Below, piece after piece: positions 2,701 through 62,905 of a stretch of DNA of 64,000 nt. The translations under genes were made by a program, and so were the position numbers. Position 1 is the stretch's first letter, and every line of letters begins with the position of its first letter. Location of the stretch: assembly GCA_002269645.1 (NCBI GenBank), contig NIVC01003363.1, positions 1 through 64,000 on the forward strand, given 5' to 3'. This DNA comes from Macrostomum lignano. Lineage: Eukaryota. The notes under the pieces are model-generated. The model did not search any database, had not been told where the DNA came from, and saw only the letters and a program-made list of their open reading frames with translations.

Positions 2701-2845
2701 GTACACCGCACTTTTAAAACTAGTTTAAGTTGGTTGGTCATTGTTGGTTAACTCAGCTATACAGCTATCGCGTCTTGTTTAGCCTGCAGATCAATCCGGA
2801 CGATAATGGCTCCTCGCCGTACTAATCTGTGACTGGCGATCTCGC

Positions 2846-3305
2846 TTATCCAGCCGCTACATGTTTATATGATGACAGAGGTTACTTATCCAGCCGCCAC
2901 ATGTATATATGATGGCAGAGGTTACTTATCCAGCCGCTACATGTATATATGATGGCAGAGGTTACTTATCCAGCCGCTACATGTATATATGATGGCAGAG
3001 GTTACTTATCCAGCCGCCACATGTATATATGATGGCAGAGGTTACTTATCCAGCCGCTACATGTATATATGATGGCAGAGGTTACTTATCCAGCCGCTAC
3101 ATGTATATATGATGGCAGAGGTTACTTATCCAGCCGCTACATGTATATATGATGGCAGAGGTTACTTATCCAGCCGCTACATGTATATATGATGGCAGAG
3201 GTTACTTATCCAGCCGCTACATGTATATATGATGGCAGAGGTTACTTATCCAGCCGCTACATGTATATATGATGGCAGAGGTTACTTATCCAGCCGCTAC
3301 ATGTA
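2846..3305. repeat. 40-bp minisatellite x~11.5; mirror 63085-63546
   Basis: GATGGCAGAGGTTACTTATCCAGCCGCTACATGTATATAT units. Confidence 0.95.
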
Positions 3306-3487
3306 CAAGACAAAAGCGAAAGCTTTCTGGCATGTCAGTTGCAGTTTTGCGTATCTTCAGCAAATTTTTTATTGGAAGAATTATGAAATCGGGAAAATCA
3401 GGAACTGCACCGCTAATCTATTTACACGCGAATTCCGCACGCGCATCGGAGCCACGCGAGAAGCGGGCAGTCCGCACCGAGCGCCCG

Positions 3488-6243
3488 TCAGTCGTGCAGC
3501 GCCGCGATCACCAGGTCCATGACGTTCGTGCCCGTCAGCCCCGGCTGGAACAGCGCCGGCGGCTCGCCGCCCGCCTCAGCCAGCAGCGAGTGCGAATCGA
3601 AGCCGGCCAGGGCGGCCCGGCAGCGGCCCTCACCCAGCCGGGCGGCCGCTCTCGGCCACGTGTCCGAGTCCACCAGACCGCCAGCCGCCTCGGTCGGACC
3701 ATCGATGCCGTCGGTGCCCGCTGTCAGCACGGTGGGTCGCCAGGGCGTCCTTGGACGGTCTCTGCCGGCCAGCGGCCGAGCCGCTCAGCCAGCAGCAGCG
3801 CCAGGTGGCCGGCGCGGCCGCCGACGCCGATGACGCCGTTCAGAGCGCCGGTTGTGTCGACGGTCGGCTCACCTCCGGCCAGCAGGGCGATGCCGCCGGA
3901 GCCGCCGGCAGCGCGCCAGATAGCGACAGCCTCGGCCAGCTTCGCCGCGTCGCCTTCGCCTAGGCTTGGGAAGTCGGCGGTGTCGGCGGTGTCAGCGGCG
4001 TCGGCGCGGAGCATCAGGCGGAGCAGCGAGGCCAGCCAGGCGTGGACCCGCTCCGCCACGGCGGACACGTCACCAGCCAGCTCGGTTGTCATGACAACGG
4101 CTGCCAGGAAGCGGGTCCCGGGGCACCGGCGTCGAGCAACCGAAGTCGAGCGGCCTCCAGCGCCGTCCGGTTGTTGCCGACGATGAAATTCGCCACCGCG
4201 GGCGCTGCCACAGGCGCCGGAGCCGCAGCCTCATCAGCCTGCAGCAGCTTCAGTGCAGTTGGCGGCAGCCGGGCGTCGACGCCCCGCAGCCGCGCGGTCT
4301 CCAAGGCGGCCTGCAGAGCCGCGCCGGCCGCAGCCGGAGCCACCGGCACCGTGGGCCCGCTGGCGATCACCTCAAGCGGGTCGCCGACAACGTCGGAGAG
4401 GACGAGGCCAGCCAGCTGGCAGCCGCGCGCGCGGCACCGGAGCGCCAGACCGCCGGCCTTCACGGCATCCAGACGGGTGCGGACGGCGTTGAGCTCCGCG
4501 ATGGAGAAGCCGGCGGTGGACAGCGCCCGGGTGGCGGCCCGGTAGTCCGGCAGCGGCAGGCGGGGCCAGGCCAGCAGAGCGCTGCCGCCGCCGGTCACCA
4601 TGGCAACCAGGAGGTCGCCGGGGCCGAGGCTGTCAATCAAGTCGGACACGGCCCGGCTGCCCATCAGCACCGTCTCGTCTGGCAGGTTGTCGCGGGGACC
4701 CTCGAACACCTGCGGGTTGGCGCGGCCAGGTGCTCAGAATTTACCCGGGTTTTATCAGCTGACCAAGGCTAACTAACTAACTAAATAAGTAATAAGGCGC
4801 CTCAGCCATTGAACAGGCTCTTCCGCCACTAGAGATAAATATAGATTCCAGGTTGGGAGTGTACTAATGTACACTAAGATCCTAATTAGAGCTGAGAGGA
4901 CTGTACATCGAGCCGGGCAAGCGGCGCCAGTCAGGCCGAGAGCGGGCCCTCGACCCCCGACCCTCAGATCGTACGCCTATCCCAAACCCAATTGGCTTAT
5001 CTAAACCTCCCCGGGGGACAGCGAGGGTTCGACGTACCAGTCAGGAAGCCCGTGCCCAAAAAATCCTGGTTAGTAGACCCCATAGCCTATTAGCGTTGGT
5101 CCGAAGACCGAAGGCCGTGGCTACCCGCTGGGGCCGACCGCCCACCACCCCCCGGGTACTCTTGCCAAGACAGTCTCTTATCTTTGAAGCGGCAGGAGGG
5201 CTAATCGCCGGGACTATTTCACCCTTTGCTTCGCCAACCCACCATTTCTATAGTGACCGTGCCAACGGTCCCGTCCTGTTCAGACTCAGTCCTGGTTTTG
5301 GCACACTACAGCTTTAATAGAGTCGCTGGCTGTTCGCTCAGAGGGCACTCCGAGGGGGACCGTCAGAGCACCAACTGGAACAGGTATAGGCCTGCCTACC
5401 TATACAGCTACCCACAGCCCTTCCTGATCCACTATTACCCTCCAACCCAGCCTACTAACTCATGACAAGCTTTCGGCCTGGCAGAGACAAGTTTCACAGG
5501 GGTACTGCGGTTAGGCGTCTCTATGCGAGACAAAACCATCAGCTGACCAAGGCTCGATTCCACCCATTAGCTAAACAGCAATTACACTCTGCAACAATTC
5601 TGTCCGCCCTACAAGCTTTCCGCGCCACATTCTCTACTTTCTACTTATCAGTAGACGAACCGGCTCTGACAGCTAATTGGATATCTGAATCTCGTGACAC
5701 CTCAGTCACCCTGGCGCAACGCCCTCTCCCAATCATCGCACATGTACACTCTGGGCCTTGGGGGCTGGCCTCATGGAAGTGGATCGCATGACAACCCGGC
5801 CAACCAAGCGTCAGACGCACCCGAATGCGGCTTGCCAGGCCGCTATCGTCCGGCAGACGAAAGCCCAGCCCGGCGCTCCGTTCAGCGCGCGTCGGCGCCG
5901 GCGCCAGCACGACGCCACCCAGAAAGCGCCGGCCGAGGCGCGCCAGCGGCAGTCCGCACGCCATCCCGCCGGCAGCCTTGCCGAAGGCCACAAAGCCGAC
6001 GCCGCCTGCGACGTCAAAGTCGCGACATTCGCCGGCGCTGCTGCGGATCCGCAGGCGCAAAACTTCTCCATCCTGGACGTCGCTGAGCAGCTCGATGGAG
6101 CGGCGCACCAGCGACTCCGGGTCTACGGCGGCCACACCGGCTGCGAAGGCGTCGCAGAGGCGGCTGCCCACTGTGGAGGCTGCGGCGGCGGACATCCGGC
6201 TGAGGCCGCTAATTCGAAGCACGGCTGCTGCGGCTGTGAGCAT
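3488..6243 (-). CDS. GLYCTK: Glycerate kinase (GLYCTK/MOFRL family); exon 1 6243-5821, exon 2 4709-3488 with two apparent -1 frameshifts (~4120, ~3740)
   Basis: FGKA, R|VFEG..DNLPD, GGGSALL, LSDVVGDPLEVIASGPTV, LLAGGEPTV, GGR, GTDGIDGPTEAAG, TGTNVMD motifs; phase-0 GT-AG intron 5820-4710. May be a pseudogene or carry sequencing errors. Confidence 0.88.
4771..5537 (-). mobile_element. Non-coding retroposon (SINE-like or non-autonomous non-LTR, ~765 bp) in the GLYCTK intron; mirror copy 60859-61622 (+)
   Basis: 17-bp TSD AGCCTTGGTCAGCTGAT (4754-4770, 5538-5554) and a 3' TTATTACTTATTTAGTTAGTTAGTT tail; no long ORF. Confidence 0.8.
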
Positions 6244-6661: not shown

Positions 6662-7405
6662 GGTGAAGTGTCCCAGTCTGAGGACCAATGGCGGGTGAGG
6701 TGTCCCAGTCTGAGGACCAATGGCGGGTGAAGTGTCCCAGTCTGAGGACCAATGGCGGGTGAAGTGTCCCAGTCTGAGGACCAATGGTGGGTGAAGTGTC
6801 CCAGTCTGAGGACAATGGCGGGTGAAGTGTCCCAGTCTCAGGACCAATGGCGGGTGAAGTGTCCCAGTCTCAGGACCAATGGTGGGTGAAGTGTCCCAGT
6901 CTGAGGACAATGGCGGGTGAAGTGTCCCAGTTTCAGGACCAATGGCGGGTGAAGTGTCCCAGTCTCAGGACCAATGGCGGGTGAAGTGTCCCAGTCTGAG
7001 GACAATGGCGGGTGAAGTGTCCCAGTCTCAGGACCAATGGCGGGTGAAGTGTCCCAGTCTCAGGACCAATGGCGGGTGAAGTGTCCCAGTCTGAGGACAA
7101 TGGTGGGTGAAGTGTCCCAGTCTGAGGACAATGGCGGGTGAAGTGTCCCAGTCTCAGGACCAATGGCGGGTGAAGTGTCCCAGTCTCAGGACCAATGGCG
7201 GGTGAAGTGTCCCAGTCTGAGGACAATGGCGGGTGAAGTGTCCCAGTCTCAGGACCAATGGCGGGTGAAGTGTCCCAGTCTCAGGACCAATGGCGGGTGA
7301 AGTGTCCCAGTCTCAGGACCAATGGCGGGTGAAGTGTCCCAGTCTGAGGACAATGGCGGGTGAAGTGTCCCAGTCTCAGGACCAATGGCGGGTGAAGTGT
7401 CCCAG
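6662..7405. repeat. 31-32-bp minisatellite x~23 between GMF and GLYCTK; mirror 59342-59736 has only ~12.5 copies
   Basis: GGCGGGTGAAGTGTCCCAGTCTCAGGACCAAT units. Confidence 0.95.
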
Positions 7406-29233: not shown

Positions 29234-30039
29234 NNNNNNNNNNNNNNNNNNNNNNNNNNNNNNNNNNNNNNNNNNNNNNNNNNNNNNNNNNNNNNNNNNN
29301 NNNNNNNNNNNNNNNNNNNNNNNNNNNNNNNNNNNNNNNNNNNNNNNNNNNNNNNNNNNNNNNNNNNNNNNNNNNNNNNNNNNNNNNNNNNNNNNNNNNN
29401 NNNNNNNNNNNNNNNNNNNNNNNNNNNNNNNNNNNNNNNNNNNNNNNNNNNNNNNNNNNNNNNNNNNNNNNNNNNNNNNNNNNNNNNNNNNNNNNNNNNN
29501 NNNNNNNNNNNNNNNNNNNNNNNNNNNNNNNNNNNNNNNNNNNNNNNNNNNNNNNNNNNNNNNNNNNNNNNNNNNNNNNNNNNNNNNNNNNNNNNNNNNN
29601 NNNNNNNNNNNNNNNNNNNNNNNNNNNNNNNNNNNNNNNNNNNNNNNNNNNNNNNNNNNNNNNNNNNNNNNNNNNNNNNNNNNNNNNNNNNNNNNNNNNN
29701 NNNNNNNNNNNNNNNNNNNNNNNNNNNNNNNNNNNNNNNNNNNNNNNNNNNNNNNNNNNNNNNNNNNNNNNNNNNNNNNNNNNNNNNNNNNNNNNNNNNN
29801 NNNNNNNNNNNNNNNNNNNNNNNNNNNNNNNNNNNNNNNNNNNNNNNNNNNNNNNNNNNNNNNNNNNNNNNNNNNNNNNNNNNNNNNNNNNNNNNNNNNN
29901 NNNNNNNNNNNNNNNNNNNNNNNNNNNNNNNNNNNNNNNNNNNNNNNNNNNNNNNNNNNNNNNNNNNNNNNNNNNNNNNNNNNNNNNNNNNNNNNNNNNN
30001 NNNNNNNNNNNNNNNNNNNNNNNNNNNNNNNNNNNNNNN
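29234..30039. other. Assembly gap (806 N)
   Basis: Run of N directly visible; lies at the junction of the two inverted arms. Confidence 1.
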
Positions 30040-40200: not shown

Positions 40201-43200
40201 TTTTCGTTTCTTAGAAAATCTTTTACAGGTGACTTCAGCGCCAGGGTTTACATTTTACACATCAGATACTCGGCTTTTCGTTTCTTAGAAAATCTTTTAC
40301 AGGTGACTTCAGCGCCAGGGTTTACATTTTAAACATCAGATACTCGGCTTTTCGTTTCTTAGAAAATCTTTTACAGGTGACTTCAGCGCCAAGGTTTACA
40401 TTTTACACATCAGATACTCGGCTTTTCGTTTCTTAGAAAATATTTTACATGTGACTTCAGCGCCAAGGTTTACATTTTAAACATCAGATACTCGGCTTTT
40501 CGTTTCTTAGAAAATCTTTTACAGGAGACTTCAGCGCCAGGGTTTACATTTTACACATCAGATACTCGGCTTTTCGTTTCTTAGAAAATCTTTTACAGGT
40601 GACTTCAGCGCCAAGGTTTACATTTTACACATCAGATACTCGGCTTTTCGTTTCTTAGAAAATCTTTTACAGGTGACTTCAGCGCCAAGGTTACTTCCAG
40701 CGCTGAGGCAATTCTCCATTCCGCTGGCTCCTGAGCACATACAAACGCGACAATATTGTAAGCAGGCACGCACTCATGCTGTACGACACGCTCACGCTCA
40801 ATCAGGGTGTACAGTGGCCCCGACTTTCTTATAGCCGGGCGTGTACACTCTCTGTGCGACAACTTCCTCATGGGTTTACCGCTGAGCTGCTGTGCCCCAA
40901 TCAAACAGGACAATGGACAAACAGGATAATTCAAATAGAGTTTAAGAATGACAGCTTACATTCTCTTTAATGTAGCTCCTGTCAGCCTCCGGAATGGTGA
41001 GCCACTGTTGGCCCAGCTGCATCCTGACTGAGCTATTCTTGGAGTACAGCTGGTTCTTGAGCTGCAGGCCGGCCTGCATCCTGACGAAGGTGGTGTTGTT
41101 AACATCGCGCAGGATCTCGGACAGCTGGCGTAGGAACTGCACCTAGAACAGGGAGGCCCACCGGGGTTTTATCCAGCTGCTAATGGCAGGATAATTAGCA
41201 CGGCTGCACACACCAATAACTCACCAGATTCTGGTTGGCTGCATCTTGCAGAAAGTTGAGCGCAGTCTCGCGCTGGGCCTTGTCTACAACAGTGGTTGAA
41301 TGAGAAACTTAGGAATTGCATACAAATTAAATGTAATTAGCCCATTGACCTTTTAATACAATTGAGAACCATACAAGCAATTATTAGCAAATACTACTTA
41401 CTACTTACCATGCCTGTATTATTGTTTTAATGTGTCTTGTTTTGCACACAAAAATGTAGGACCCTAAAGTTCTGGCATATAGATGGTACACACAGAGGCC
41501 AGAGCAATAGCAAAGAATTACTTTGACTACTCCTAACCATGGTATTAATAGACTAAAACTGAAAGATTATCTACTTTCCTCTAAATTATCTTACAAACCA
41601 ATAGTAGGAACCTTAGCGATATTTTGAAAGCCTATAAATGTTAAAAATTTCATTTTAAATATATATATTTTTATTTTATACTCATGGATATTATAAGCAA
41701 AGACATAATAAGCCAAAAGTTATATATATTTAAAAAGAGAATTTTTTAAGTTTTCTAATTTTTCAAATTTAGTCCTCTCATTAATTGCTTCATAAAGTAT
41801 AGTCAAAATGATGAAATCAATTAAACATATCCAATTATACAAAAAATTCTAGCATTCAAATTAATGCTTATTAATCTTGATATACCATGTTGATATACCA
41901 AATTGATATTTCAAAATCGGCACATTATACCAACTTTGATTGACTAATACATAAACTTTAGAAAAGAGGTTTGCAAAACACAATTTAAATTTGTTTTGAT
42001 TTTTTAAAATATTTTTTAATTCTTTTGCTTATATAGTTAACCATGCTAAATGTGGTCCAATTTGTTGCAGGGGTTGGTATCTTTGAACATGACAATCTAT
42101 ACTAGTTTTAGACATAATACTATTAACAAAGACATTGTTAAGTGGCTCCCCACCCTATTCTCATCCCTATCCTTATTTCCCAGTAGACAAATAGTTTTAA
42201 AAGAAAAAGGTTTTTTGTCCACTTAGCAAATGAGCTGTCAGCAGACAAAAGAACTAGAAACCTGTTCAACACAATGAGGTAATTCAAGTTGAAGTTACAA
42301 CACAATTATGATACAATTTTTAGTAGCATTAGAATTCAGCTAATCAGTTTTTTCTCTAGCATTCTTGCAATGTATTTCAAGTCAACAAGTTTGCTTGGCC
42401 TTTGCAAAAAAGCATGTTTTTTTAATATTTATTCCCTTTAACATTGAGCAATTTCTTAGCCAAGACCAGGCGCTGCGGAACAAGTTTTTGCCAGGGGGGC
42501 AAGACCAAGTTTCCAAAACTTGGTCTTGGTCTTGGAAAGACCAAGTTTCCAAGCCCAGACCCTGTCTTGGACAATGACCAAAAATTTGAGCAAAATTATG
42601 CTATTGAATGGTATTTGAGGGGGCAATGCCCCCCTGCAACTCAATGTCAGGGGGGCAGCTGCCCCCCCCCTGCCCCCCCTGTTCTGTGGCGCCTGGCCAA
42701 GACACATGTACTATCATAGGAAAATTTTTAATTGAATGGTGCAAGTTTGAAGAATTTTAGGTGGGGTCAAGGCCAAACCTATCTATATGTAAACTGCCTT
42801 TTATGCAATATTAAGGTGCCTAACACTGCCAATAAGGTAGAGTTTATCTATTATTAGGCTCTGTGATGACATGCTATCCAATATACCCTGCTTTGTGACT
42901 TTGCTTGCAAGGCTATATAATTTTTGGTTGTTGTTGTTATTATTTAAAATATTGGTTAAGCCATTTTTTTAAGCCATTTTGACCCTCTTATTATCTTAGT
43001 GCCTTGGCCATTATTGTTGTAAATTTAAAAAGCTGCTTTCTTATCTTGGTTCTTAGTTGGATCCAAAAACTGAGCTTATAGGCCTAATGTCAAATCTATA
43101 AATAGTAAGTGCAATTTTAATTAAGTTATAAATGTATTATAAAATTATCTGGCACAAACATATTACTACCTTCCCTTTGCCATTTTAGACTTTAAAGCTT

Positions 43201-45931: not shown

Positions 45932-45977
<46 letters not shown>

Positions 45978-46153
45978 ATCCCCCTTCCTCGCTGGCACGG
46001 CCGGGTTGGGCGACGGGTAGCGGTGTCGGGGTTCGGGTACTAGACTGCCCAGGGCTTACGAGCTCGATCGGCGACCCCGAGGCGTACGGACACTTCGGGG
46101 GGAGGTCAAGGTTGAGAAGTCGAGAGAGAGGGGAGGGGCGGCTGTGGGCGGGC

Positions 46154-46350
46154 GGCCACTCGACAGCCTGGTGAGTCAAGGAAGAGAGAGAGGGCTGCGG
46201 GCGGTCGGCCACTCGACAGCCTGGTGAGTCAAGGAAAAGAGAGAGGGCTGTGGGCGGGCGGCCACTCGACAGCCTGGTGAGTCAAGGAAGAGAGAGAGGG
46301 CTGCGGGCGGTCGGCCACTCGACAGCCTGGTGAGTCAAGGAAAAGAGAGA
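46154..46350. repeat. 53-bp x4 repeat inside the LTR (also 54065-54260), each with TGAGTCA / CTG|GTGAGT
   Basis: GGCCACTCGACAGCCTGGTGAGTCAAGGAA.. repeated 4 times in each LTR. Confidence 0.9.
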
Positions 46351-46460
46351 GTGAGAGAGAGAGAGAGATCAGGAGAGCGACCCCGAGGAACACAGGCAAT
46401 TGTCTCGACAGCTTACCGGGCCGGGTCGATTATAGCACTCATACACGGGAAGGCCGATCG

Positions 46461-46506
46461 ATTGCAATAAATTGAGTCTTCGCAGTAAGAGACCGTCTCT
46501 ACGGTT
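46461..46506 (-). other. Spliced-leader-like 46-mer in the 3' LTR
   Basis: Identical copy of 54372-54417. Confidence 0.75.
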
Positions 46507-46936
46507 GATCGCTGGTCACGTTCGTTTATTTATCGCGGTGGGCGCAAATGGGCGCAGGCACGGTGAGAAAAGGGGCGGGGTCTGAGCGTCGCCTTAAATA
46601 ACGAGTAAAAAGGGGCAGGGGCGCAAACAAGGGGGGGAGAAAGGGCTTAAACAATGGAGCTGATTGACAGCTGATTGGCTGCGGCGAGGGGAGGGTGGAA
46701 GCGCGCACGGCCAGGGAGAGGGAGAGAGAGCAGAGGCCCAGCCAATCAGCACGGCTAGCCAAAGGGCTAAACAGCCAAGGCGAGAGAGAGAGAGAAAGAG
46801 AGCAGAGGCTCAGCCAAAGGGCTCATAGCTCCAGACTGGCTTGAGCCGGGGGGGGGGTAACAATAATCAACTACCAAAGTCAACAACTATCAAAGTGCAC
46901 TTGCACCAGGGGAGCACTGTGACACAGGTCACAACA

Positions 46937-47632: not shown

Positions 47633-48514
47633 CTAGACCGCCACCTCCGCCGCCCGGCGCAACAACCCCAACACGCGTCCTCCGTCGATTAGTTCAAACT
47701 GAGGGATCGCAACACTCATGACGAACCGAGTGCTTCGCTTGAAGGCAGGCCGCCGCCAGACACGCCGAGCATGACCCCGACACTTGGCGCTGATGTCACG
47801 GAGAATGAACTTGACAGTCTGAGCCAAAAGCTCGGCGATTTCGCGTCGATGATCCAGCCGCTCGCTGCCGCACAGTCCCACCATTTCAGTCAAAAGCCGG
47901 AACATCGCAGCTGGACTCCCCGACAACAAAGCGTGCCGAAGCTCCGACCGGATTCGAGCTCTTCGCTGCGTTGCCTCCCCGCTCCAGGTGTATTCCACCT
48001 CGGTACTCGGCTCGCTCCTCATCAGCCACGCTGGCGACTCCCGTTGGTCGATGACGAGCTCCGGTTCGTCTTCTGACATCGAAGTTTCGCCGTCGGATTC
48101 ATTCAAGAGCTCTTCTTCCTCTGACTGCGTGATTTCACAGCAGCTCTGAGCAGTCTCCTCGCCGCCGCAACCACCACGCTCGCTTCCTTCCGACTCCCTG
48201 TCCTCGTCTGACTCTTCTGTTTCGTCTTCAATCGTTACGACAAACTCCTCCGGGACGCACATCCCATCCGGCGGGACAAAATACCGGGCGCACTCGAGCG
48301 GGTTGCTAACGGCATCCTGCCCGAACCGGTCGTACAGCGCTCGTCGAAACGGACACAGCAGGACCGCACTCGCATGCTGCAGCCTCTGGAAATTCTCCGT
48401 TCCACCGGGTCCACACTTGTCGGGGTGCCGTCGCAGGCTCTCACGGCGGTACGCACGTCGCAGCTCCTCCTCCGTCGCGAAGGGGCTGACACCAAACTCG
48501 GCGTAGAGGTCCAT
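47633..48514 (-). CDS. ORF3 of the LTR element: DnaJ/Hsp40 J-domain protein (293 aa from the ATG at 48514), acidic linker, unknown helical/basic C-terminal domain
   Basis: DLYAEFGVSPFATEEELRRAYRRESLRRHPDK..GTENFQRLQHASAVL....RRALYDRFG is a complete J-domain with HPD (48427-48419); GGCATGG Kozak context; lies between the pol stop and the PPT on the same strand. Confidence 0.88.
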   Translation of the reverse strand: MDLYAEFGVSPFATEEELRRAYRRESLRRHPDKCGPGGTENFQRLQHASAVLLCPFRRALYDRFGQDAVSNPLECARYFVPPDGMCVPEEFVVTIEDETEESDEDRESEGSERGGCGGEETAQSCCEITQSEEEELLNESDGETSMSEDEPELVIDQRESPAWLMRSEPSTEVEYTWSGEATQRRARIRSELRHALLSGSPAAMFRLLTEMVGLCGSERLDHRREIAELLAQTVKFILRDISAKCRGHARRVWRRPAFKRSTRFVMSVAIPQFELIDGGRVLGLLRRAAEVAV

Positions 48515-48715
48515 GCCCGGAAAGCAGTGCCTGCAACAACCACGACTCACTTTTGAGAGCAGGGCAATGGTTCCTTCGAGCCTCTTTGGGGCGCCGATCC
48601 TTCATCCCTGATGGCAGGGTTGGGCAGGTGGGACCTCCACTGACGGGCCTTAAGAGGGGAAATATATATTTTTGTTTGTGAAGCAGAGGCAATAACACGA
48701 GCCCAGTTTTCAATA

Positions 48716-53881: not shown

Positions 53882-54371
53882 ATGTTGTATCCCCCTTCCT
53901 CGCTGGCACGGCCGGGTTGGGCGACGGGTAGCGGTGTCGGGGTTCGGGTACTAGACTGCCCAGGGCTTACGAGCTCGATCGGCGACCCCGAGGCGTACGG
54001 ACACTTCGGGGGGAGGTCAAGGTTGAGAAGTCGAGAGAGAGGGGAGGGGCGGCTGTGGGCGGGCGGCCACTCGACAGCCTGGTGAGTCAAGGAAGAGAGA
54101 GAGGGCTGCGGGCGGTCGGCCACTCGACAGCCTGGTGAGTCAAGGAAAAGAGAGAGGGCTGTGGGCGGGCGGCCACTCGACAGCCTGGTGAGTCAAGGAA
54201 GAGAGAGAGGGCTGCGGGCGGTCGGCCACTCGACAGCCTGGTGAGTCAAGGAAAAGAGAGAGTGAGAGAGAGAGAGAGATCAGGAGAGCGACCCCGAGGA
54301 ACACAGGCAATTGTCTCGACAGCTTACCGGGCCGGGTCGATTATAGCACTCATACACGGGAAGGCCGATCG

Positions 54372-54417
54372 ATTGCAATAAATTGAGTCTTCGCAGTAAG
54401 AGACCGTCTCTACGGTT
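54372..54417 (-). other. Spliced-leader-like 46-mer in the 5' LTR
   Basis: AACCGTAGAGACGGTCTCTTACTGCGAAGACTCAATTTATTGCAAT; resembles flatworm SL exons (AACCG start, AACCGT/ACGGT stem, ATTT.TTGCA end) but lacks the terminal ATG. Confidence 0.75.
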
Positions 54418-54435
54418 GATCGCTGGTCACGTTCG

Positions 54436-54444
54436 TTTATTTAT
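54436..54444 (-). promoter_or_regulatory. Overlapping TATA-like (ATAAATA) and poly(A) signal (AATAAA) of the LTR
   Basis: GATAAATAAAC starts ~27 nt upstream of the SL-like sequence; same motif at 46525-46533 in the 3' LTR. Confidence 0.55.
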
Positions 54445-55054
54445 CGCGGTGGGCGCAAATGGGCGCAGGCACGGTGAGAAAAGGGGCGGGGTCTGAGCGT
54501 CGCCTTAAATAACGAGTAAAAAGGGGCAGGGGCGCAAACAAGGGGGGGGAGAAAGGGCTTAAACAATGGAGCTGATTGACAGCTGATTGGCTGCGGCGAG
54601 GGGAGGGTGGAAGCGCGCACGGCCAGGGAGAGGGAGAGAGAGCAGAGGCCCAGCCAATCAGCACGGCTAGCCAAAGGGCTAAACAGCCAAGGCGAGAGAG
54701 AGAGAGAAAGAGAGCAGAGGCTCAGCCAAAGGGCTCATAGCTCCAGACTGGCTTGAGCCGGGGGGGGGGGGTAACAATAATCAACTACCAAAGTCAACAA
54801 CTATCAAAGTGCACTTGCACCAGGGGAGCACTGTGACACAGGTCACAACACATGAATATATACATGAGTATGAATACATTTATATAGGTATTTTAACTGC
54901 AATTTATCTAGTTTTCTTTCTTGTATTTTACCAGATTATGAAATTGGCAGGTTAGATTATAGCATAGCTGCATAGGCCTGTAATCCTTCATTTTTATTAT
55001 TTTATATTATTTTATAATATTTTATTATTTACTAGGAAACTATGAACTTTTTGG

Positions 55055-56603: not shown

Positions 56604-58299
56604 CTTTTTGGATATAAGTACAGTCATAGGCCCAGACTATAAACTAGAACTAGAATTATAGTATATTTTTATTTTATTTGCCATGGGCATTTTAGGGGGG
56701 CTAGTCTTTTAAATAGAATTCTGACCAAATTAGCTATAATAAAAAAATCCTATAGGCCAATCTAGATATATCTGCCAAGGCATACATGCGCAACCTTGGG
56801 AATCACTTGGCCATTTCTATTGGCAATATACATAGGCCTATGCAAGTCACTATTGGCTAAGAGCGATTATATGACTAATTTATGCCAACAGGCTTTTATT
56901 ACCAACAAAAATATGCCAAAATTTGCCAAATCTGTCTACCCTATCCTTATACTCCTATTTTACTCTTTTAAAGGGTTCTTCTCTTAGTCCTAGATATTCC
57001 TGGGATCAGAGGGTCACAGCTTCTTAGCCTTATACTGCCCTGAGGCAATTTATTGCTCTAAGGCATTTTACTGCTCTGAGGCAATCTATTGCCCAATGGT
57101 GATCTACTGCTCTAAGGCAATTCTCACTTTTTAGCATATCTTAACTCTCCCAAATTGGGGCTTTTAATTCTTAATAATTGAAGAAGCCAAATAAAAAAAT
57201 ACGTATAGATTTAGTGAAAACTTAGCCATCAGCTAAGTTCTTGCAAGTTTGCAGGTTTGCAGGTCTCTGCAAGTTGCCTTCCTTGGCCCACTTGGGGCTT
57301 CTATTTATACTAGTTGACTGGTCTATTTAAAACAAATTTATTTGCAGAAAATTATTTTGTATCACAACATTAACACAAAGATATTTTAGCAGACATTTGA
57401 ATATTATATTTTCTAAGAAATGATAGGTTGTTATCATAGCAAAAATATACTAGAAGAATATACAGTATTATAGAAAAGTGCACTATCTCACTATTAAACT
57501 AATTCACTAGCCCATTTGTAGATGCTATCTACCAAATCTAATACTAATATATTAATATTTTTCTTATACAAACTTAAATATTTAAAATATTGGAGTTGCT
57601 TTTGTTTTATTCTTATATTTGTTAAAAATTTAAATGAATCCAATGATGAATTAAATAGCAAAAAATAACCTACTTTCCAAATACCAAATATGAATACCAA
57701 ATTTTTATTCCATCTCTACTATATGGTGTAGGTTTTAATTTCAGCTGTGACCTGATATAGAAAACCTGGCATGTCTCATTGGCATAGGTTGCTAAATGCT
57801 AAGTTGGCAAGCCAATTGCTATATAAGCTACTTAGGGCATTATTGATGTGGTGTCACAAAGATATTACTAATATATGCTTTAGTTTTTGCCTATTTTATA
57901 TGATGATTTCTAAATTTGCAATGAATAACTTCAATTACTTGTTGGCAACTTAGATAATCTATTCTTTGTTTTAATTGCAGCTTCTGAATTTGTTTTTTTT
58001 TAAATCACAATATCTTGAAAGCCAAAAACTCCTATAGTTGCAATATATGCTACATATAGTATACTTCTACCTTTTTGAATTTGCCAAAACATTAATTAAG
58101 TCACATAGACAACCATGACTTGCCAATGTGCATGCAAAATGTCAATTTGAATAAAAACTATTCTTTACAAATGAAAATATAAAAAACAGTAAATATACAT
58201 TGGAAAAGGGAAAATTATACATTTACAGAGAAATTGAGAAAACGATTGCCAGTTTGATTACAATTTAATGTTCTAGGACTCGAACCCCGGACCTTGCAG

Positions 58300-58740
58300 G
58301 CGGGCAAATCCGGCGCATCCTCGGGCTACATGTGCAGCCTGCCCGACGAGCTGCAGCAGAAGCTGAAGAAATTCCGACTGCGCAAGGAGAAAAATGTGGC
58401 CGCCATTGTGCTGAAAATCGACCGCGAGAAGATGGAGGTCTGCGTGGAGACCGAGGTTCAGGACTGCAGCATCGAGGACATTGTGGAGGAGCTGTCCGAG
58501 CACCAGCCGCGCTACCTGCTGCTGAGCTACGTGCACTCGTACCCTGACGGCCGGGTCACCTACCCGCTGATGTTCATCTTCAGCACCCCGCGTGACAGCA
58601 ACCCGGAGCTGCAGGTGCTGTACACCGGCACCATCAAGACCGTCATTGATGTGGTCGGCCTCACCAAGGTGTTCGAAATTCGCAGCACGGACGAACTGGA
58701 CGAGGAATGGCTGCAGCAGAAGCTGGAGTTCTACCGGTGA
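58300..58740 (+). CDS. GMF: Glia maturation factor, second copy
   Basis: Identical 146-aa translation to the left copy; differs by synonymous GCA/GCG and ATT/ATC. Confidence 0.93.
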   Translation, partial: AGKSGASSGYMCSLPDELQQKLKKFRLRKEKNVAAIVLKIDREKMEVCVETEVQDCSIEDIVEELSEHQPRYLLLSYVHSYPDGRVTYPLMFIFSTPRDSNPELQVLYTGTIKTVIDVVGLTKVFEIRSTDELDEEWLQQKLEFYR

Positions 58741-60155
58741 CTTCGGCCTGTGTTTTGTAGCTGCCGGATGTCCTGCCTGTCTCCACTGGAACTTGCTTGG
58801 TGTGTGCGAGCTGTTTTAGGCTAGAAATTTTATTCATATTTATGCCAATAACTTACATGCTTTGATTCGCCTGAGATTTCAGTTTATACTCAGCTTATCG
58901 CCCTGGATGCCACCCCAGCAATTTCAAAGCTGTTATACCATGTTTTTGTTTGTCTGAAACAGAATTCTGTTAATTGTGCTGCCACCTGGGAAGGCTTTGG
59001 ATGAAATCGCTTCTCATGTATTCCTGCTTCGTTAATTCTTTAGCATGTAAATTTTAATAAATCCATGGTTATGCAGACTTGTCATATTTGTGCCTGTCTA
59101 AAATTTTAGCCGTTTATCTATTAAACCTGATCTTTCCGAATAATCAATCAATTTTTATTCTTGGCAAGCCGATGACAACCACAAAGCTGATTTTTCTAAT
59201 TGACAATAAATCAATTTGTGCTGTTTAGCTTTGATCAGCAACACGAGATGTCCTGTGCAACAGAAACACCTGTTCTGCTTTCCTCTGCCTTTAGTTTTGT
59301 TGCTTAGGACCTTTGTCTGTGGAATTACTGAGTAGTCAATGCTGGGACACTTCACCCGCCATTGGTCCTGAGACTGGGACACTTCACCCGCCATTGGTCC
59401 TGAGACTGGGACACTTCACCCGCCATTGTCCTCAGACTGGGACACTTCACCCACCATTGGTCCTCAGACTGGGACACTTCACCCGCCATTGGTCCTCAGA
59501 CTGGGACACTTCACCCGCCATTGTCCTCAGACTGGGACACTTCACCCGCCATTGGTCCTCAGACTGGGACACTTCACCCGCCATTGGTCCTCAGACTGGG
59601 ACACCTCACCCGCCATTGGTCCTCAGACTGGGACACCTCACCCTCCATTGTCTTCAGACTGGGACACTTCACCCGCCATTGTCCTCAGACTGGGACACTT
59701 CACCCGCCATTGTCCTCAGACTGGGACACTTCACCTGAGACATTTTCCAATATAACTTCATCTAAATCAAAGCTTTAAAATTTTTCAATAGTTCTGAATG
59801 TGAGGAAATTAGCAGCCTAGTGCTTAAAATTGCTCGGTACATTGATAAAAAACTGCTCAGACGCTCTGCATTAAAAATCAAATGCCAAAAAACAGTAAAA
59901 ATAAAGTTGTATAAGCATGCGTTCGAGCAGTTTTTCAGATTAAAATTAAAAAGATTTTAAAATTCTACATGTAGTAATGTCAACAGCATACTACTCATCG
60001 ATTCTTCACCTCGTTAGCAGTATCTGTGGCTTTTCATTTCGTCTGTTGATAAGACAGCTGATTGAGCATTCCGGTAGCTCAGATGTCATAGGATGCTATT
60101 ACGAGCTAGATAAAGCCCAGTCACGTGACAGCTGTCCGACCCAATTCTCCTGCAG

Positions 60156-62905
60156 CTCACAGCCGCAGCAGCCGTGCTTCGAATTAGCGGCCTCAGCCGG
60201 ATGTCCGCCGCCGCAGCCTCCACAGTGGGCAGCCGCCTCTGCGACGCCTTCGCAGCCGGTGTGGCCGCCGTAGACCCGGAGTCGCTGGTGCGCCGCTCCA
60301 TCGAGCTGCTCAGCGACGTCCAGGATGGAGAAGTTTTGCGCCTGCGGATCCGCAGCAGCGCCGGCGAATGTCGCGACTTTGACGTCGCAGGCGGCGTCGG
60401 CTTTGTGGCCTTCGGCAAGGCTGCCGGCGGGATGGCGTGCGGACTGCCGCTGGCGCGCCTCGGCCGGCGCTTTCTGGGTGGCGTCGTGCTGGCGCCGGCG
60501 CCGACGCGCGCTGAACGGAGCGCCGGGCTGGGCTTTCGTCTGCCGGACGATAGCGGCCTGGCAAGCCGCATTCGGGTGCGTCTGACGCTTGGTTGGCCGG
60601 GTTGTCATGCGATCCACTTCCATGAGGCCAGCCCCCAAGGCCCAGAGTGTACATGTGCGATGATTGGGAGAGGGCGTTGCGCCAGGGTGACTGAGGTGTC
60701 ACGAGATTCAGATATCCAATTAGCTGTCAGAGCCGGTTCGTCTACTGATAAGTAGAAAGTAGAGAATGTGGCGCGGAAAGCTTGTAGGGCGGACAGAATT
60801 GTTGCAGAGTGTAATTGCTGTTTAGCTAATGGGTGGAATCGAGCCTTGGTCAGCTGATGGTTTTGTCTCGCATAGAGACGCCTAACCGCAGTACCCCTGT
60901 GAAACTTGTCTCTGCCAGGCCGAAAGCTTGTCATGAGTTAGTAGGCTGGGTTGGAGGGTAATAGTGGATCAGGAAGGGCTGTGGTAGCTGTATAGGTAGG
61001 CAGGCCTATACCTGTTCCAGTTGGTGCTCTGACGGTCCCCCTCGGAGTGCCCTCTGAGCGAACAGCCAGCGACTCTATTAAAGCTGTAGTGTGCCAAAAC
61101 CAGGACTGAGTCTGAACAGGACGGGACCGTTGACACGGTCACTATAGAAATGGTGGGTTGGCGAAGCAAAGGGTGAAATAGTCCCGGCGATTAGCCCTCC
61201 TGCCGCTTCAAAGATAAGAGACTGTCTTGGCAAGAGTACCCGGGGGTGGTGGGCGGTCGGCCCCAGCGGGTAGCCACGGCCTTCGGTCTTCGGACCAACG
61301 CTAATAGGCTATGGGGTCTACTAACCAGGATTTTTTGGGCACGGGCTTCCTGACTGGTACGTCGAACCCTCGCTGTCCCCGGGGAGGTTTAGATAAGCCA
61401 AATGGGTTTGGGATAGGCGTACGATCTGAGGGTCGGGGGTCGAGGGCCCGCTCTCGGCCTGACTGGCGCCGCTTGCCCGGCTCGATGTACAGTCCTCTCA
61501 GCTCTAATTAGGATCTTAGTGTACATTAGTACACTCCCAACCTGGAATCTATATTTATCTCTAGTGGCGGAAGAGCCTGTTCAATGGCTGAGGCGCCTTA
61601 TTACTTATTTAGTTAGTTAGTTAGCCTTGGTCAGCTGATAAAACCCGGGTAAATTCTGAGCACCTGGCCGCGCCAACCCGCAGGTGTTCGAGGGTCCCCG
61701 CGACAACCTGCCAGACGAGACGGTGCTGATGGGCAGCCGGGCCGTGTCCGACTTGATTGACAGCCTCGGCCCCGGCGACCTCCTGGTTGCCATGGTGACC
61801 GGCGGCGGCAGCGCTCTGCTGGCCTGGCCCCGCCTGCCGCTGCCGGACTACCGGGCCGCCACCCGGGCGCTGTCCACCGCCGGCTTCTCCATCGCGGAGC
61901 TCAACGCCGTCCGCGCCCGTCTGGATGCCGTGAAGGCCGGCGGTCTGGCGCTCCGGTGCCGCGCGCGCGGCTGCCAGCTGGCTGGCCTCGTCCTCTCCGA
62001 CGTTGTCGGCGACCCGCTTGAGGTGATCGCCAGCGGGCCCACGGTGCCGGTGGCTCCGGCTGCGGCCGGCGCGGCTCTGCAGGCCGCCTTGGAGACCGCG
62101 CGGCTGCGGGGCGTCGACGCCCGGCTGCCGCCAACTGCACTGAAGCTGCTGCAGGCTGATGAGGCTGCGGCTCCGGCGCCTGTGGCAGCGCCCGCGGTGG
62201 CGAATTTCATCGTCGGCAACAACCGGACGGCGTTGGAGGCCGCTCGACTTCGGTTGCTCGACGCCGGTGCCCCGGGACCCGCTTCCTGGCAGCCGTTGTC
62301 ATGACAACCGAGCTGGCTGGTGACGTGTCCGCCGTGGCGGAGCGGGTCCACGCCTGGCTGGCCTCGCTGCTCCGCCTGATGCTCCGCGCCGACGCCGCTG
62401 ACACCGCCGACACCGCCGACTTCCCAAGCCTAGGCGAAGGCGACGCGGCGAAGCTGGCCGAGGCTGTCGCTATCTGGCGCGCTGCCGGCGGCTCCGGCGG
62501 CATCGCCCTGCTGGCCGGAGGTGAGCCGACCGTCGACACAACCGGCGCTCTGAACGGCGTCATCGGCGTCGGCGGCCGCGCCGGCCACCTGGCGCTGCTG
62601 CTGGCTGAGCGGCTCGGCCGCTGGCCGGCAGAGACCGTCCAAGGACGCCCTGGCGACCCACCGTGCTGACAGCGGGCACCGACGGCATCGATGGTCCGAC
62701 CGAGGCGGCTGGCGGTCTGGTGGACTCGGACACGTGGCCGAGAGCGGCCGCCCGGCTGGGTGAGGGCCGCTGCCGGGCCGCCCTGGCCGCTTCGATTCGC
62801 ACTCGCTGCTGGCTGAGGCGGGCGGCGAGCCGCCGGCGCTGTTCCAGCCGGGGCTGACGGGCACGAACGTCATGGACCTGGTGATCGCGGCGCTGCACGA
62901 CTGAC
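60156..62905 (+). CDS. GLYCTK: Glycerate kinase, second copy; exon 1 60156(or ATG 60201)-60575, exon 2 61684-62905 with the same two frameshifts plus one extra 1-nt deletion at ~62790
   Basis: Mirror of the left copy; the first ATG is replaced by CAG (60153-60155). Confidence 0.86.

What the first reader, a model, noticed from the sequence alone, without database searches (positions are those of the whole stretch)
60140..60203. GLYCTK start: CAG acceptor in one arm, ATG at the same three bases in the other
Seen: right arm TTCTCCTG-CAG-CTCACAGCC (60153-60155); left arm TTCTCCTG-ATG-CTCACAGCC (6243-6241). The sequence after CAG is in frame with the kinase. Established: the flatworm SL ends in AUG and can supply the initiator Met. 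Inference: the CAG is a trans-splice acceptor whose SL AUG starts the protein. The ATG version is either a real allele that hard-wired the start codon or an artefact of polishing with SL-containing RNA reads; either way it points to SL-donated initiation here.
Basis: partly seen in the sequence, partly recalled or inferred. Interest (0 to 1): 0.7.

Follow-up and report, generated by a model that had tools for sequence, protein, structure and literature searches.

The report
Trans-splice acceptor versus polished-in ATG
In the flatworm Macrostomum lignano the glycerate kinase gene starts at a spliced-leader acceptor whose leader can supply the start codon (a known flatworm mechanism), and the ATG at that spot in the other copy is more likely leader sequence written into the assembly by RNA-based polishing than a real allele.

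Summary
Window 60153-60155 reads CAG and the mirror site 6243-6241 (minus strand) reads ATG, with identical flanks. The window is Macrostomum lignano scaffold NIVC01003363.1 (assembly Mlig_3_7). Its "palindrome" is two haplotype contigs joined head-to-head across an N gap. A third copy on another contig also reads ATG. It is the same haplotype as the left arm, so ATG stands for one haplotype assembled twice.

CTGCAG|CTC fits the published SL acceptor motif. The annotated 5'-partial CDS starts 3 nt after it, and the SL's AUG is in frame. That adds 16 residues (MLTAAAAVLRISGLSR) laid out like the N-terminal extensions of other animal GLYCTKs. SL-donated initiation is plausible but unproven: an in-frame, open AUG is expected 26% of the time by chance, and a genomic AUG follows at codon 17.

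ATG is probably an artefact (about 0.65).
- Mlig_3_7 was Pilon-polished with RNA-seq.
- Four gene models from the ML2 assembly, built from the same PacBio reads, all read CAG.
- ATG copies have transcript starts inside exon 1.
- Two other genes carry 7-8 nt SL tails in the genome sequence.

A real allele (about 0.28) is not excluded: the swap is cleanly haplotype-linked, and the neighbouring GMF acceptor is intact in all copies. DNA reads would settle it.

The parts
60153..60155 (+). CAG of the likely SL trans-splice acceptor of GLYCTK copy g1 (haplotype B); junction at 60155|60156
   Evidence: The sequence is CTGCAG|CTC, which fits the [T/C]TNCAG motif of PMC8629364. The annotated 5'-partial CDS PAA51763.1 begins at 60159.
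60140..60152 (+). 3' end of the outron (CCCAATTCTCCTG), moderately pyrimidine-rich; 60138-60146 GACCCAATT matches the SL's GACTCAATT at 8 of 9 positions, in register
   Evidence: position-by-position comparison with the SL.
60156..60200 (+). 45-nt leader of exon 1, open and in frame with the SL AUG; it encodes LTAAAAVLRISGLSR
   Evidence: With the SL Met, the 16 residues hold 2 Arg and no Asp or Glu. The layout matches the N-terminal extensions of other animal GLYCTKs.
60201..60203 (+). First genomic in-frame ATG in haplotype B (codon 17 counted from the SL AUG); the alternative start site
   Evidence: It aligns with the internal Met that precedes the first conserved helix in orthologues.
60156..60575 (+). 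GLYCTK exon 1, right arm
   Evidence: tblastn of the g3 protein and inspection of the junction. The donor is GTGCGT at 60576.
60576..61683 (+). Intron 1 (GT...CAG)
61684..62904 (+). GLYCTK exon 2 up to the TGA stop; it carries three 1-bp homopolymer deletions (about 62269, 62647 and 62788) that break the frame in this copy
   Evidence: The g3 copy has the extra bases and an intact 543-aa product with DUF4147 and MOFRL domains.
6241..6243 (-). ATG at the position of the acceptor CAG in copy g2 (haplotype A, left arm)
   Evidence: The same is seen in g3 at L001 9986-9988.
5821..6240 (-). GLYCTK exon 1, left arm; the annotated CDS of g2 starts only at 6228, 12 nt after the junction
60126..60131 (+). 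In-frame TGA stop (60126-60128) followed directly by a second CAG (60129-60131); possible alternative upstream acceptor, also in frame with the SL AUG
   Evidence: The ML2-based UniProt models A0A1I8GFF3 and A0A1I8H6Z2 begin exactly at 60132 (LSDPILLQL...).
58297..58299 (+). CAG of the SL acceptor of the upstream GMF (cofilin/ADF-fold) gene; used as a matched control, and intact in all three copies
   Evidence: A fourth copy's protein starts at junction+0 (AGKSG...). Pfam Cofilin_ADF.
29234..30039 (.). Scaffolding gap (806 N) that joins the two haplotype contigs head-to-head

Best explanation
The window is M. lignano scaffold NIVC01003363.1. It consists of two allelic contigs (haplotype A on the left, inverted; haplotype B on the right) joined across a gap. 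CAG at 60153-60155 is the spliced-leader acceptor of the glycerate kinase gene. In the mature mRNA the 35-nt SL (...TTGCATG) is joined to CTCACAGCC, so the SL's terminal AUG lies in frame, 16 codons ahead of the first genomic AUG. Translation from the SL AUG would add MLTAAAAVLRISGLSR, a short, basic, acid-free extension of the kind other animal GLYCTKs carry. Leaky scanning to the AUG at 60201 would give the short form (inferred). The ATG that replaces CAG in the left arm and in the third copy is most likely not in the animal's DNA. It would be the last bases of the SL, copied from SL-bearing RNA-seq reads into the consensus when the Canu contigs were polished with Pilon. This probably succeeded only on haplotype A because that haplotype was assembled twice, which would halve its vote from DNA reads (inferred). 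Shown: the sequence facts, the haplotype structure, the polishing method and the annotation offsets. Inferred: use of the junction, use of the SL AUG, and the artefact mechanism.
For: Identity and gene: 98% identity to M. lignano A0A1I8GFF3, and the window equals NIVC01003363.1 positions 1-64000. Domains are DUF4147 and MOFRL.

Acceptor: motif match and SL sequence. The 5'-partial CDS starts at junction+3 in g1, and at junction+0 or +3 at the GMF acceptor.

SL AUG: it is in frame and open. Orthologues show an N-terminal extension followed by an internal Met. The flatworm SL AUG is known to initiate translation (citing Cheng et al. 2006).

Artefact:
(b) The changed bases are exactly the SL's terminal bases.
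(c) All four gene models from the ML2 assembly read LLQL, that is CAG. Mlig_3_7 reassembled the same PacBio accession; that this accession is the ML2 dataset is my own knowledge, supported by PMC8629364's citation of it as Wasik et al.'s data.
(d) The two ATG copies have annotated starts 12 nt inside exon 1 and no cut at the junction. The intact acceptors (g1, GMF, dNK) have starts at +0 to +3. I read this as no RNA reads bridging outron-ATG-exon.
(e) Among 14 independent gene 5' ends sampled from the same assembly, Tom22 has ATTGCATG (8 nt of SL) in the genome 11 nt before its 5'-partial CDS. An AMPK-CBM gene has TTGCATG 45 nt before its ATG. The background is P(>=7 nt) = 0.0034 per 64-nt window, so two in 14 has a probability of about 1e-3.
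(f) g3's exon 2 is free of homopolymer errors while its intron keeps at least 3, the signature of RNA-driven polishing.
(g) With end-to-end mapping, read support for SL bases falls with distance from the junction. A weakly expressed gene can therefore have only positions -3 and -2 flipped.
Against: No reads were available, so neither the SL junction nor the absence of ATG from DNA was seen directly. ATG is perfectly haplotype-linked: it is one of 25 substitutions that the left arm and g3 share against the right arm, which is just what a real variant looks like. The GMF acceptor lies 1.9 kb upstream on the same three contigs and is unchanged in every copy. The left arm still carries three uncorrected homopolymer errors in exon 2 and the 3' UTR, so RNA polishing was weak there, yet it has ATG. 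A clean 2-base change therefore needs a low mismatch cap, reads trimmed so that ATG remained, or a finely placed threshold. For initiation at the SL AUG: in-frame and open is expected by chance at 0.26, and a genomic AUG is available at codon 17.
Confidence: 0.55

Rival explanations
1. Real allele. Haplotype A truly carries CA->AT. The change destroys the AG acceptor and places a genomic ATG exactly where the SL's AUG sits in the mature mRNA of haplotype B. The start codon is then 'hard-wired', and the mRNA would be capped from its own start site or trans-spliced at the upstream CAG (60129-60131), which is also in frame.
For: ATG travels with 24 other haplotype-A substitutions and appears in both independently assembled A contigs. 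The matched GMF acceptor on the same contigs was not altered. The left arm shows little sign of RNA polishing yet has ATG. Exactly two bases changed and none further upstream, which simple read-mapping models do not predict easily. An in-frame upstream acceptor exists that would keep the allele functional. Full-length SL sequence does occur in M. lignano genomic DNA elsewhere: in the LTRs in this window and at the gene 5' end reported in PMC8629364.
Against: A neutral tandem substitution that gives exactly AT at exactly this dinucleotide is very improbable, about 1e-5 per site. All four ML2 gene models read CAG. The ATG copies are annotated with transcript starts inside exon 1, not with transcripts that read through the ATG, although such an allele could not be trans-spliced here. 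SL tails of 7-8 nt at two other gene 5' ends in the same RNA-polished assembly point to a systematic process.
Confidence: 0.28
2. The acceptor is real but the SL AUG is not the working start codon. GLYCTK is translated from the genomic AUG at 60201-60203, and the in-frame, open 45-nt leader is coincidence. This rival concerns translation only and is compatible with either origin of the ATG.
For: In frame and stop-free over 15 GC-rich codons has a chance probability of 0.26. In S. mansoni the SL AUG is in frame in 28% of trans-spliced mRNAs, about chance level. The SL AUG has a weak context (U at -3, C at +4; read from the sequences). The Met at 60201 aligns with the internal Met just before the first conserved helix of orthologues, and some orthologue isoforms start there (P0002). 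The neighbouring GMF gene shows the same in-frame leader, so the pattern is common.
Against: A scanning ribosome meets the SL AUG first. The 16 residues have the make-up of a targeting presequence (2 Arg, no acidic residues). Most orthologues carry a comparable extension. The divergent paralogue A0A1I8I6I4 keeps all 15 leader codons unchanged although it differs further downstream.
Confidence: 0.35
3. The SL junction is at a different AG: either the upstream CAG at 60129-60131 (junction 60131|60132) or one of the downstream AGs (60161-62, 60167-68, 60170-71). In that case the CAG at 60153-60155 is ordinary outron or leader sequence.
For: The ML2-based models A0A1I8GFF3 and A0A1I8H6Z2 begin exactly at 60132, right after that CAG and one codon after the TGA stop. 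Annotated starts are not exact: they fall at +0, +3 and +12 at different copies.
Against: The upstream site lacks the YT of the motif and has a poor pyrimidine tract (GTGACAG). The three downstream AGs would all put the SL AUG out of frame and open a uORF across the main AUG (my reading). g1's start at 60159 fits 60155|60156 with the same +3 offset as GMF. The SL-like ATG sits exactly at 60153-60155 in the other copies.
Confidence: 0.15

Closest known systems
[quoted passage not shown] 2006, J Biol Chem; 'slORFs', PMC9851317)
   Same: The SL ends in AUG. The acceptor is followed by an open, in-frame leader, and no genomic ATG precedes the leader in haplotype B. The predicted product is extended at the N-terminus.
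   Different: The SL AUG is not strictly required here, because a genomic AUG lies 16 codons downstream. No read, ribosome or protein evidence was available. M. lignano papers note the terminal ATG as a likely start codon (PMC10468722), but I found no gene-level study.
Consensus errors introduced by polishing a genome with RNA-seq reads (Pilon fed with STAR alignments, as in Mlig_3_7, PMC5730564)
   Same: The altered bases equal the transcript-only sequence (the SL tail) at an RNA processing junction. They are found only in the RNA-polished assembly and not in models from the other assembly. Comparable SL tails sit at other gene 5' ends (Tom22, AMPK-CBM).
   Different: I found no published description of SL 'burn-in' in this assembly. 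The change is only 2 bases, is haplotype-linked, and is absent at the neighbouring GMF acceptor, so the case is not proven.
Relict spliced leaders in genomic DNA from recycled (retroposed) trans-spliced mRNAs, described in dinoflagellates (Slamovits and Keeling 2008; from my own knowledge, not checked here)
   Same: SL-derived bases lie in the genome directly upstream of the coding sequence.
   Different: Those relicts are whole or tandem SLs on intron-poor retrocopies. Here only 3 nt are SL-like, the 1.1-kb intron is kept, and the bases further upstream are ordinary outron sequence.
Vertebrate GLYCTK with long and short N-terminal forms
   Same: Same family (DUF4147 + MOFRL, 35-38% identity). 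The N-terminal extension is followed by an internal Met before the first conserved helix.
   Different: In vertebrates both start codons are genomic. In M. lignano haplotype B the upstream one would come from the SL. Reports of separate cytosolic and mitochondrial human isoforms are from my memory, not tested here.

Membership tests
SL trans-splice acceptor site of M. lignano | AG preceded by the enriched motif [T/C]TNCAG at the exon boundary | tested here: met
   CTGCAG|CTC at 60150-60155; motif from PMC8629364.
SL trans-splice acceptor site of M. lignano | The mature mRNA 5' end coincides with the site (SL-trimmed read peak, TBONE cut) | tested here: met
   Indirect. The deposited 5'-partial CDS PAA51763.1 starts at 60159 = junction+3. 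The GMF acceptor shows the same offset, and junction+0 in a fourth copy.
SL trans-splice acceptor site of M. lignano | RNA reads in which ...TTATTGCATG is joined to CTCACAGCC | not testable with these tools
   No read archives were reachable. The protein search with exon 1 returned nothing, and no transcript-derived proteins of this gene are in the collection.
SL-AUG-initiated ORF (slORF) | The SL ends in AUG, and that AUG is in frame with the main ORF with no intervening stop | tested here: met
   SL = CGGTCTCTTACTGCGAAGACTCAATTTATTGCATG. There are 15 open codons to the ATG at 60201. The chance expectation is 0.26.
SL-AUG-initiated ORF (slORF) | The ORF needs the SL AUG (no usable genomic AUG at the start of the conserved protein) | tested here: not met
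   A genomic in-frame ATG at 60201-60203 precedes the first conserved helix. The SL AUG would only add an extension.
SL-AUG-initiated ORF (slORF) | Initiating ribosomes or N-terminal peptides at the SL AUG | not testable with these tools
   No ribosome-profiling or proteomic data were available.
RNA-polishing artefact (SL bases written into the consensus) | The assembly was polished with RNA-seq alignments | tested here: met
   PMC5730564 methods: Pilon 1.20 with Bowtie2 DNA alignments and STAR RNA-seq alignments.
RNA-polishing artefact (SL bases written into the consensus) | The altered bases equal the SL's 3' end, at the junction | tested here: met
   CAG->ATG at -3 to -1. Bases -4 to -9 are unchanged.
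RNA-polishing artefact (SL bases written into the consensus) | The variant is absent from an assembly of the same DNA reads made without RNA | tested here: inconclusive
   Four ML2-derived UniProt models (A0A1I8GFF3, A0A1I8H6Z2 x2, A0A1I8I6I4) all read LLQL = CAG.
RNA-polishing artefact (SL bases written into the consensus) | It recurs at other SL sites of the same assembly | tested here: inconclusive
   Tom22 has 8 nt and AMPK-CBM 7 nt of SL tail at their gene 5' ends among 14 genes, P about 1e-3. The GMF, dNK and g1 acceptors are intact. The original sequence at Tom22 is unknown.
RNA-polishing artefact (SL bases written into the consensus) | Genomic DNA reads lack the variant | not testable with these tools
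   No access to SRX1063031 or the Illumina DNA libraries.
Glycerate kinase GLYCTK (DUF4147 + MOFRL) | Both Pfam domains present, and orthology to animal GLYCTK | tested here: met
   PF13660 at 2e-46 and PF05161 at 3.7e-22 on PAA74505.1. Identity to vertebrate and insect GLYCTK is 35-38% over more than 93% of the query.

The most novel reading that the evidence does not exclude
Haplotype A carries a real CA->AT change that both kills the SL acceptor and installs a genomic ATG at the exact position the SL's AUG occupies in the mature mRNA of haplotype B. That would be a segregating allele caught converting an SL-donated start codon into a hard-wired one. It could have arisen by selection on a two-step path (CAG->AAG->ATG) or by short-patch repair templated by the trans-spliced mRNA.
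Probability: 0.28. Interest if true: 0.6.

Novelty: new member of a known kind. Interest (0 to 1): 0.25.

Why it matters
If the ATG is an artefact, the lesson is practical. Mlig_3_7 is the reference genome of a regeneration and transgenesis model. It may carry SL-derived bases at trans-splice acceptors, most of all in regions assembled twice. That would erase acceptors, create false start codons, shift annotated 5' ends (as in g2, g3 and Tom22) and mislead promoter and 5'-UTR design. A genome-wide audit would be simple to run.

The biological part adds one gene to a known class. GLYCTK is a candidate for an SL-donated AUG that appends a presequence-like extension, which could allow two isoforms from one mRNA. 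If the ATG is real, it would be a rare view of how a lineage swaps an SL-supplied start codon for a genomic one.

Tried and rejected
1. Transcript-derived evidence through the protein collection. A search with exon 1 alone returned nothing, not even the known protein, probably because of the composition filter. The full-length search found only six M. lignano entries, none from RNA assemblies.

2. Reading Wasik et al. 2015 for the ML2 methods: the paper is not held.

3. Supplementary junction tables of PMC8629364: none held.

4. Random sampling of Mlig_3_7 through gypsy pol copies. The loci were gene-poor: 14 independent gene starts in about 420 kb. That was enough to find Tom22 and AMPK-CBM but too few to measure a rate.

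I did not pursue it by other means.

6. Metagenome scan for the junction 39-mer: no match.

7. Retrocopy origin for Tom22's SL tail: rejected. There is no poly(A) tract after the gene, only a tandem repeat.

8. tRNA or SINE at the GMF 5' end, suggested by a T-arm-like GGACTCGAACCCC: ARAGORN found nothing.

9. A second spliced leader ending in CTACGAATG: two gene starts share this 10-mer, but I found nothing in the literature and no SL-RNA-like gene. Left unexplained.

10. Deriving the exact rule for annotated start offsets (+0, +3, +12): no single offset rule fits all genes. I use only the contrast between intact and SL-like sites.
Full report
**What is there.** The right arm has ...CCCAATTCTCCTG CAG CTCACAGCC, with CAG at 60153-60155. 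The left arm, read on the minus strand, has the same flanks with ATG at 6243-6241. The flanks match because the window is a large inverted duplication. Left arm about 2392-26164 pairs with right arm 30040-64000 at 97.6-99.5% identity, around a run of 806 N at 29234-30039. Between 59862 and 60982, CA->AT is the only difference between the arms. Across about 17 kb of cleanly aligned arms there are 46 single substitutions, 28 indel events and two credible adjacent-base substitutions, of which this is one.

**Where it comes from.** The encoded protein is 98% identical to Macrostomum lignano glycerate kinase A0A1I8GFF3, and 35-38% identical to vertebrate and insect GLYCTK. It has the DUF4147 and MOFRL domains. 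The window equals positions 1-64000 of NIVC01003363.1 in GCA_002269645.1, the Mlig_3_7 assembly. NCBI annotates three copies:
- g1, right arm, PAA51763.1
- g2, left arm, PAA51759.1
- g3, PAA74505.1, on the 318-kb contig NIVC01000944.1

I fetched g3, and it also reads CTGATGCTC.

A three-way alignment over 7.4 kb shows 25 substitutions shared by the left arm and g3 against the right arm. CA->AT is among them. One substitution is private to the left arm and none is private to g3. So the left arm and g3 are the same haplotype (A) assembled twice, and the right arm is haplotype B. The right arm also carries a 10.6-kb Ty3/gypsy insertion that A lacks. The 'palindrome' is therefore best read as two allelic contigs joined head-to-head by the scaffolder, not as a biological inverted repeat.

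**Gene model.**
- Right arm: exon 1 is 60156-60575, the intron is 60576-61683 (GTGCGT...CAG), and exon 2 is 61684-62904.
- Both window copies carry 1-bp homopolymer deletions in exon 2 that break the frame: about 62269 and 62647 in both arms, and 62788 in the right arm only.
- g3 has the missing bases and an intact 543-aa product.

**Is CAG a trans-splice acceptor?**
- M. lignano has one reported SL, CGGTCTCTTACTGCGAAGACTCAATTTATTGCATG. The top motif at its acceptors is [T/C]TNCAG (PMC8629364), and CTGCAG fits it.
- In the Mlig_3_7 annotation, transcript 5' ends of trans-spliced genes were cut at peaks of SL-trimmed reads (PMC5730564).
- g1 is a 5'-partial CDS that starts at 60159, 3 nt after the CAG.
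- The GMF (cofilin-fold) gene, whose acceptor lies 1.9 kb upstream, behaves alike. Its 5'-partial CDS starts 3 nt after TTGCAG| in two copies, and exactly at the junction in a fourth copy.

I take this as good indirect evidence for an SL junction at 60155|60156. I could not see reads. One caveat: the ML2-derived UniProt models start at 60132, right after another in-frame CAG (60129-60131) that itself follows a TGA stop. A second, upstream acceptor is therefore possible.

**Does the SL AUG start the protein?** The junction puts the SL AUG in frame, with 15 open codons before the genomic ATG at 60201. It would add MLTAAAAVLRISGLSR.
- With the base composition of exon 1, 'in frame and open' happens by chance 26% of the time. 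In Schistosoma mansoni the SL AUG is in frame in 28% of trans-spliced mRNAs.
- Two things favour use of the SL AUG. The 16 residues hold two Arg and no acidic residue. Most animal orthologues also have an Arg/Ser-rich extension followed by an internal Met just before the first conserved helix, which is the same layout.
- A divergent paralogue keeps the leader codons unchanged.

SL-donated initiation, probably alongside initiation at 60201, is plausible and of a known kind (Cheng et al. 2006, as cited). It is not demonstrated.

**What is the ATG? The case for an artefact.**
- The Canu contigs were polished with Pilon using Illumina DNA and RNA-seq mapped by STAR.
- The changed bases are exactly the SL's last bases.
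- The PacBio accession reassembled for Mlig_3_7 is, to my knowledge, the dataset behind ML2. All four ML2 gene models (A0A1I8GFF3, A0A1I8H6Z2 with two identical entries, and the divergent A0A1I8I6I4) read LLQL, that is CAG.
- The two ATG copies are annotated with CDS starts 12 nt inside exon 1 and no cut at the junction. Intact acceptors (g1, GMF, and a dNK gene after TTTCAG|) have starts at +0 to +3. My reading is that no RNA reads bridge outron-ATG-exon on those copies. That is odd for a real allele that cannot be trans-spliced there, and expected if true pre-mRNA reads carry CAG.
- In about 420 kb sampled from the same assembly, with 14 independent gene 5' ends, Tom22 has ATTGCATG (8 nt of SL tail) in the genome 11 nt before its 5'-partial CDS. 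An AMPK-CBM gene has TTGCATG 45 nt before its ATG. Random 64-nt windows reach 7 nt or more with P = 0.0034.
- Tom22 shows no retrocopy signature.
- g3's exon 2 is error-free while its intron keeps at least three homopolymer deletions, which is what RNA-driven polishing would leave.

A mechanism that fits is end-to-end mapping, which forces SL bases onto the outron. Support for SL bases then falls with distance from the junction, so a weakly expressed gene flips only -3 and -2. Haplotype A, assembled twice, would get half the vote from DNA reads (inferred).

**The case against an artefact.**
- ATG is cleanly haplotype-linked.
- The GMF acceptor on the same contigs is untouched in all copies.
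- The left arm keeps three uncorrected exon errors and so saw little RNA polishing, yet it has ATG.
- STAR's default local mode would clip all SL bases but the G. With the default mismatch cap, support at -4 is almost as high as at -3. A clean two-base change then needs a low cap, reads trimmed so that ATG remained (a practice documented for other Macrostomum genomes), or a finely placed threshold.

Set against this is the very low prior that a neutral tandem substitution lands on exactly this dinucleotide and gives exactly AT. I put the artefact at about 0.65, a real allele at about 0.28, and anything else at the remainder.

**Comparison with what is known, and novelty.** The working part is an SL acceptor with an in-frame SL AUG, a known flatworm mechanism. 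GLYCTK would be one more member, and one where the SL AUG adds an extension rather than being indispensable. The eye-catching part, the CAG/ATG swap, is more likely an assembly artefact. That matters mainly as a quality warning for a widely used reference genome. The reading that would be new, a segregating allele that hard-wires an SL-donated start codon, remains open and can be tested directly by counting three k-mers in the public DNA and RNA reads.

**Things seen in passing.** The most notable concerns the haplotype-B gypsy element. Both of its LTRs carry the first 33 nt of the 35-nt SL on the element's sense strand, about 30 nt downstream of a GATAAATAAA box, with a GTAAG 47 nt further on. 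Other gypsy families sampled lack it. Rfam has no match, and a recent paper on M. lignano LTR elements does not mention it. Two unrelated genes start with the same 10-mer, CTACGA|ATGC, which I could not explain.

Noticed in passing
window 54372-54406 and 46461-46495 (minus strand), inside LTRs 53882-54769 and 45971-46857: Both LTRs of the haplotype-B-specific Ty3/gypsy element contain CGGTCTCTTACTGCGAAGACTCAATTTATTGCAAT. That is the first 33 nt of the 35-nt spliced leader, in the element's sense orientation. It lies about 30 nt after a GATAAATAAA (TATA-like) box, and a GTAAG follows 47 nt downstream. Element transcripts may begin with an SL look-alike, or the LTR may have captured an SL or SL-RNA gene piece. 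It is not present in the other gypsy families sampled, has no Rfam hit, and is not mentioned in PMC12801592. It could also confuse pipelines that detect SL-bearing reads.
   Followed up: partly
L017 21242-21249 (minus strand; Tom22 gene 20791-21237) and L015 about 6181 (minus strand; AMPK-CBM gene 81-6135): The Mlig_3_7 genome sequence carries ATTGCATG (8 nt of SL tail) 11 nt before the 5'-partial CDS of Tom22, and TTGCATG 45 nt before the ATG of an AMPK-CBM gene. No AG acceptor is present at either spot. Two such cases in 14 gene 5' ends has a probability of about 1e-3 by chance. All three annotated Tom22 copies start inside the exon (AVMSG or VMSG).
   Followed up: partly
L005 19321-19329 and L010 20946-20954 (minus strand): Two unrelated genes, an Ig-like_KY protein and a Rab-GDI-like protein, have the identical 10-mer CTACGA|ATGC at their annotated start codon. 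CTACGAATG occurs nowhere else in about 345 kb, and the flanks are unrelated. In the GDI gene the natural-looking Met is 5 codons further on. Unexplained.
   Followed up: partly
window 1-29233 against 30040-64000; N run 29234-30039: The 'palindrome' is two allelic contigs (haplotypes A and B, about 0.3-1% apart, with a haplotype-specific TE insertion) joined head-to-head by scaffolding. Haplotype A is also present a second time at the end of contig NIVC01000944.1, with 1 substitution in the 7.4 kb compared base by base and otherwise homopolymer indels.
   Followed up: yes
window about 62269, 62647, 62788 (right arm); about 4124, 3746 (left arm): Uncorrected 1-bp homopolymer deletions break the GLYCTK reading frame in both window copies, which is why g1 and g2 are annotated as truncated 345- and 342-aa proteins. 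The g3 copy is intact. g3's intron, by contrast, keeps at least 3 private homopolymer deletions.
   Followed up: yes
window 58297-58737 (+); mirror at about 8447-8007 (-): A GMF-like (Cofilin_ADF) single-exon gene ends 1.4 kb upstream of GLYCTK on the same strand, so the two may form an operon. Its SL acceptor TTGCAG| also puts the SL AUG in frame (M-A-G-K-S-G-A-S-S-G-Y-M...). The gene is annotated in the left arm and at the g3 locus but not in the right arm.
   Followed up: partly
window 47633-48550 (minus strand); L016 11363-12349: A DnaJ-domain ORF lies inside the gypsy element, 3' of pol. A DnaJ+chromo ORF sits next to an integrase fragment in another locus. The ML2 model A0A1I8H0P8 fuses DnaJ with TE domains. 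The family may carry a J-domain gene, which is curious given the reported heat activation of M. lignano LTR elements.
   Followed up: no
window 60138-60146: The outron sequence GACCCAATT matches the SL's GACTCAATT at 8 of 9 positions, in the same register relative to the junction (-18 to -10). This may be chance (roughly P = 0.003-0.02). It may also explain why one ML2 gene model (A0A1I8I6I4) starts exactly at GAC.
   Followed up: no
L001 19411-19421 (minus strand) and L016 11355-11365: Two genes, one LRAT-like and one DnaJ/chromo, have their genomic ATG directly after a consensus acceptor (CTGCAG|ATG and TTACAG|ATG). Trans-splicing there would give two AUGs in tandem.
   Followed up: no
window 59341-59711 (mirror 6662-7405); 15626-16737 and 39655-40692; 20486-22493 and 33702-35901; 24958-27020: There are several tandem-repeat arrays, with periods of about 32, 74, 40 and 56 nt. 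Copy number differs between the haplotypes. The 32-nt array lies between GMF and GLYCTK.
   Followed up: no
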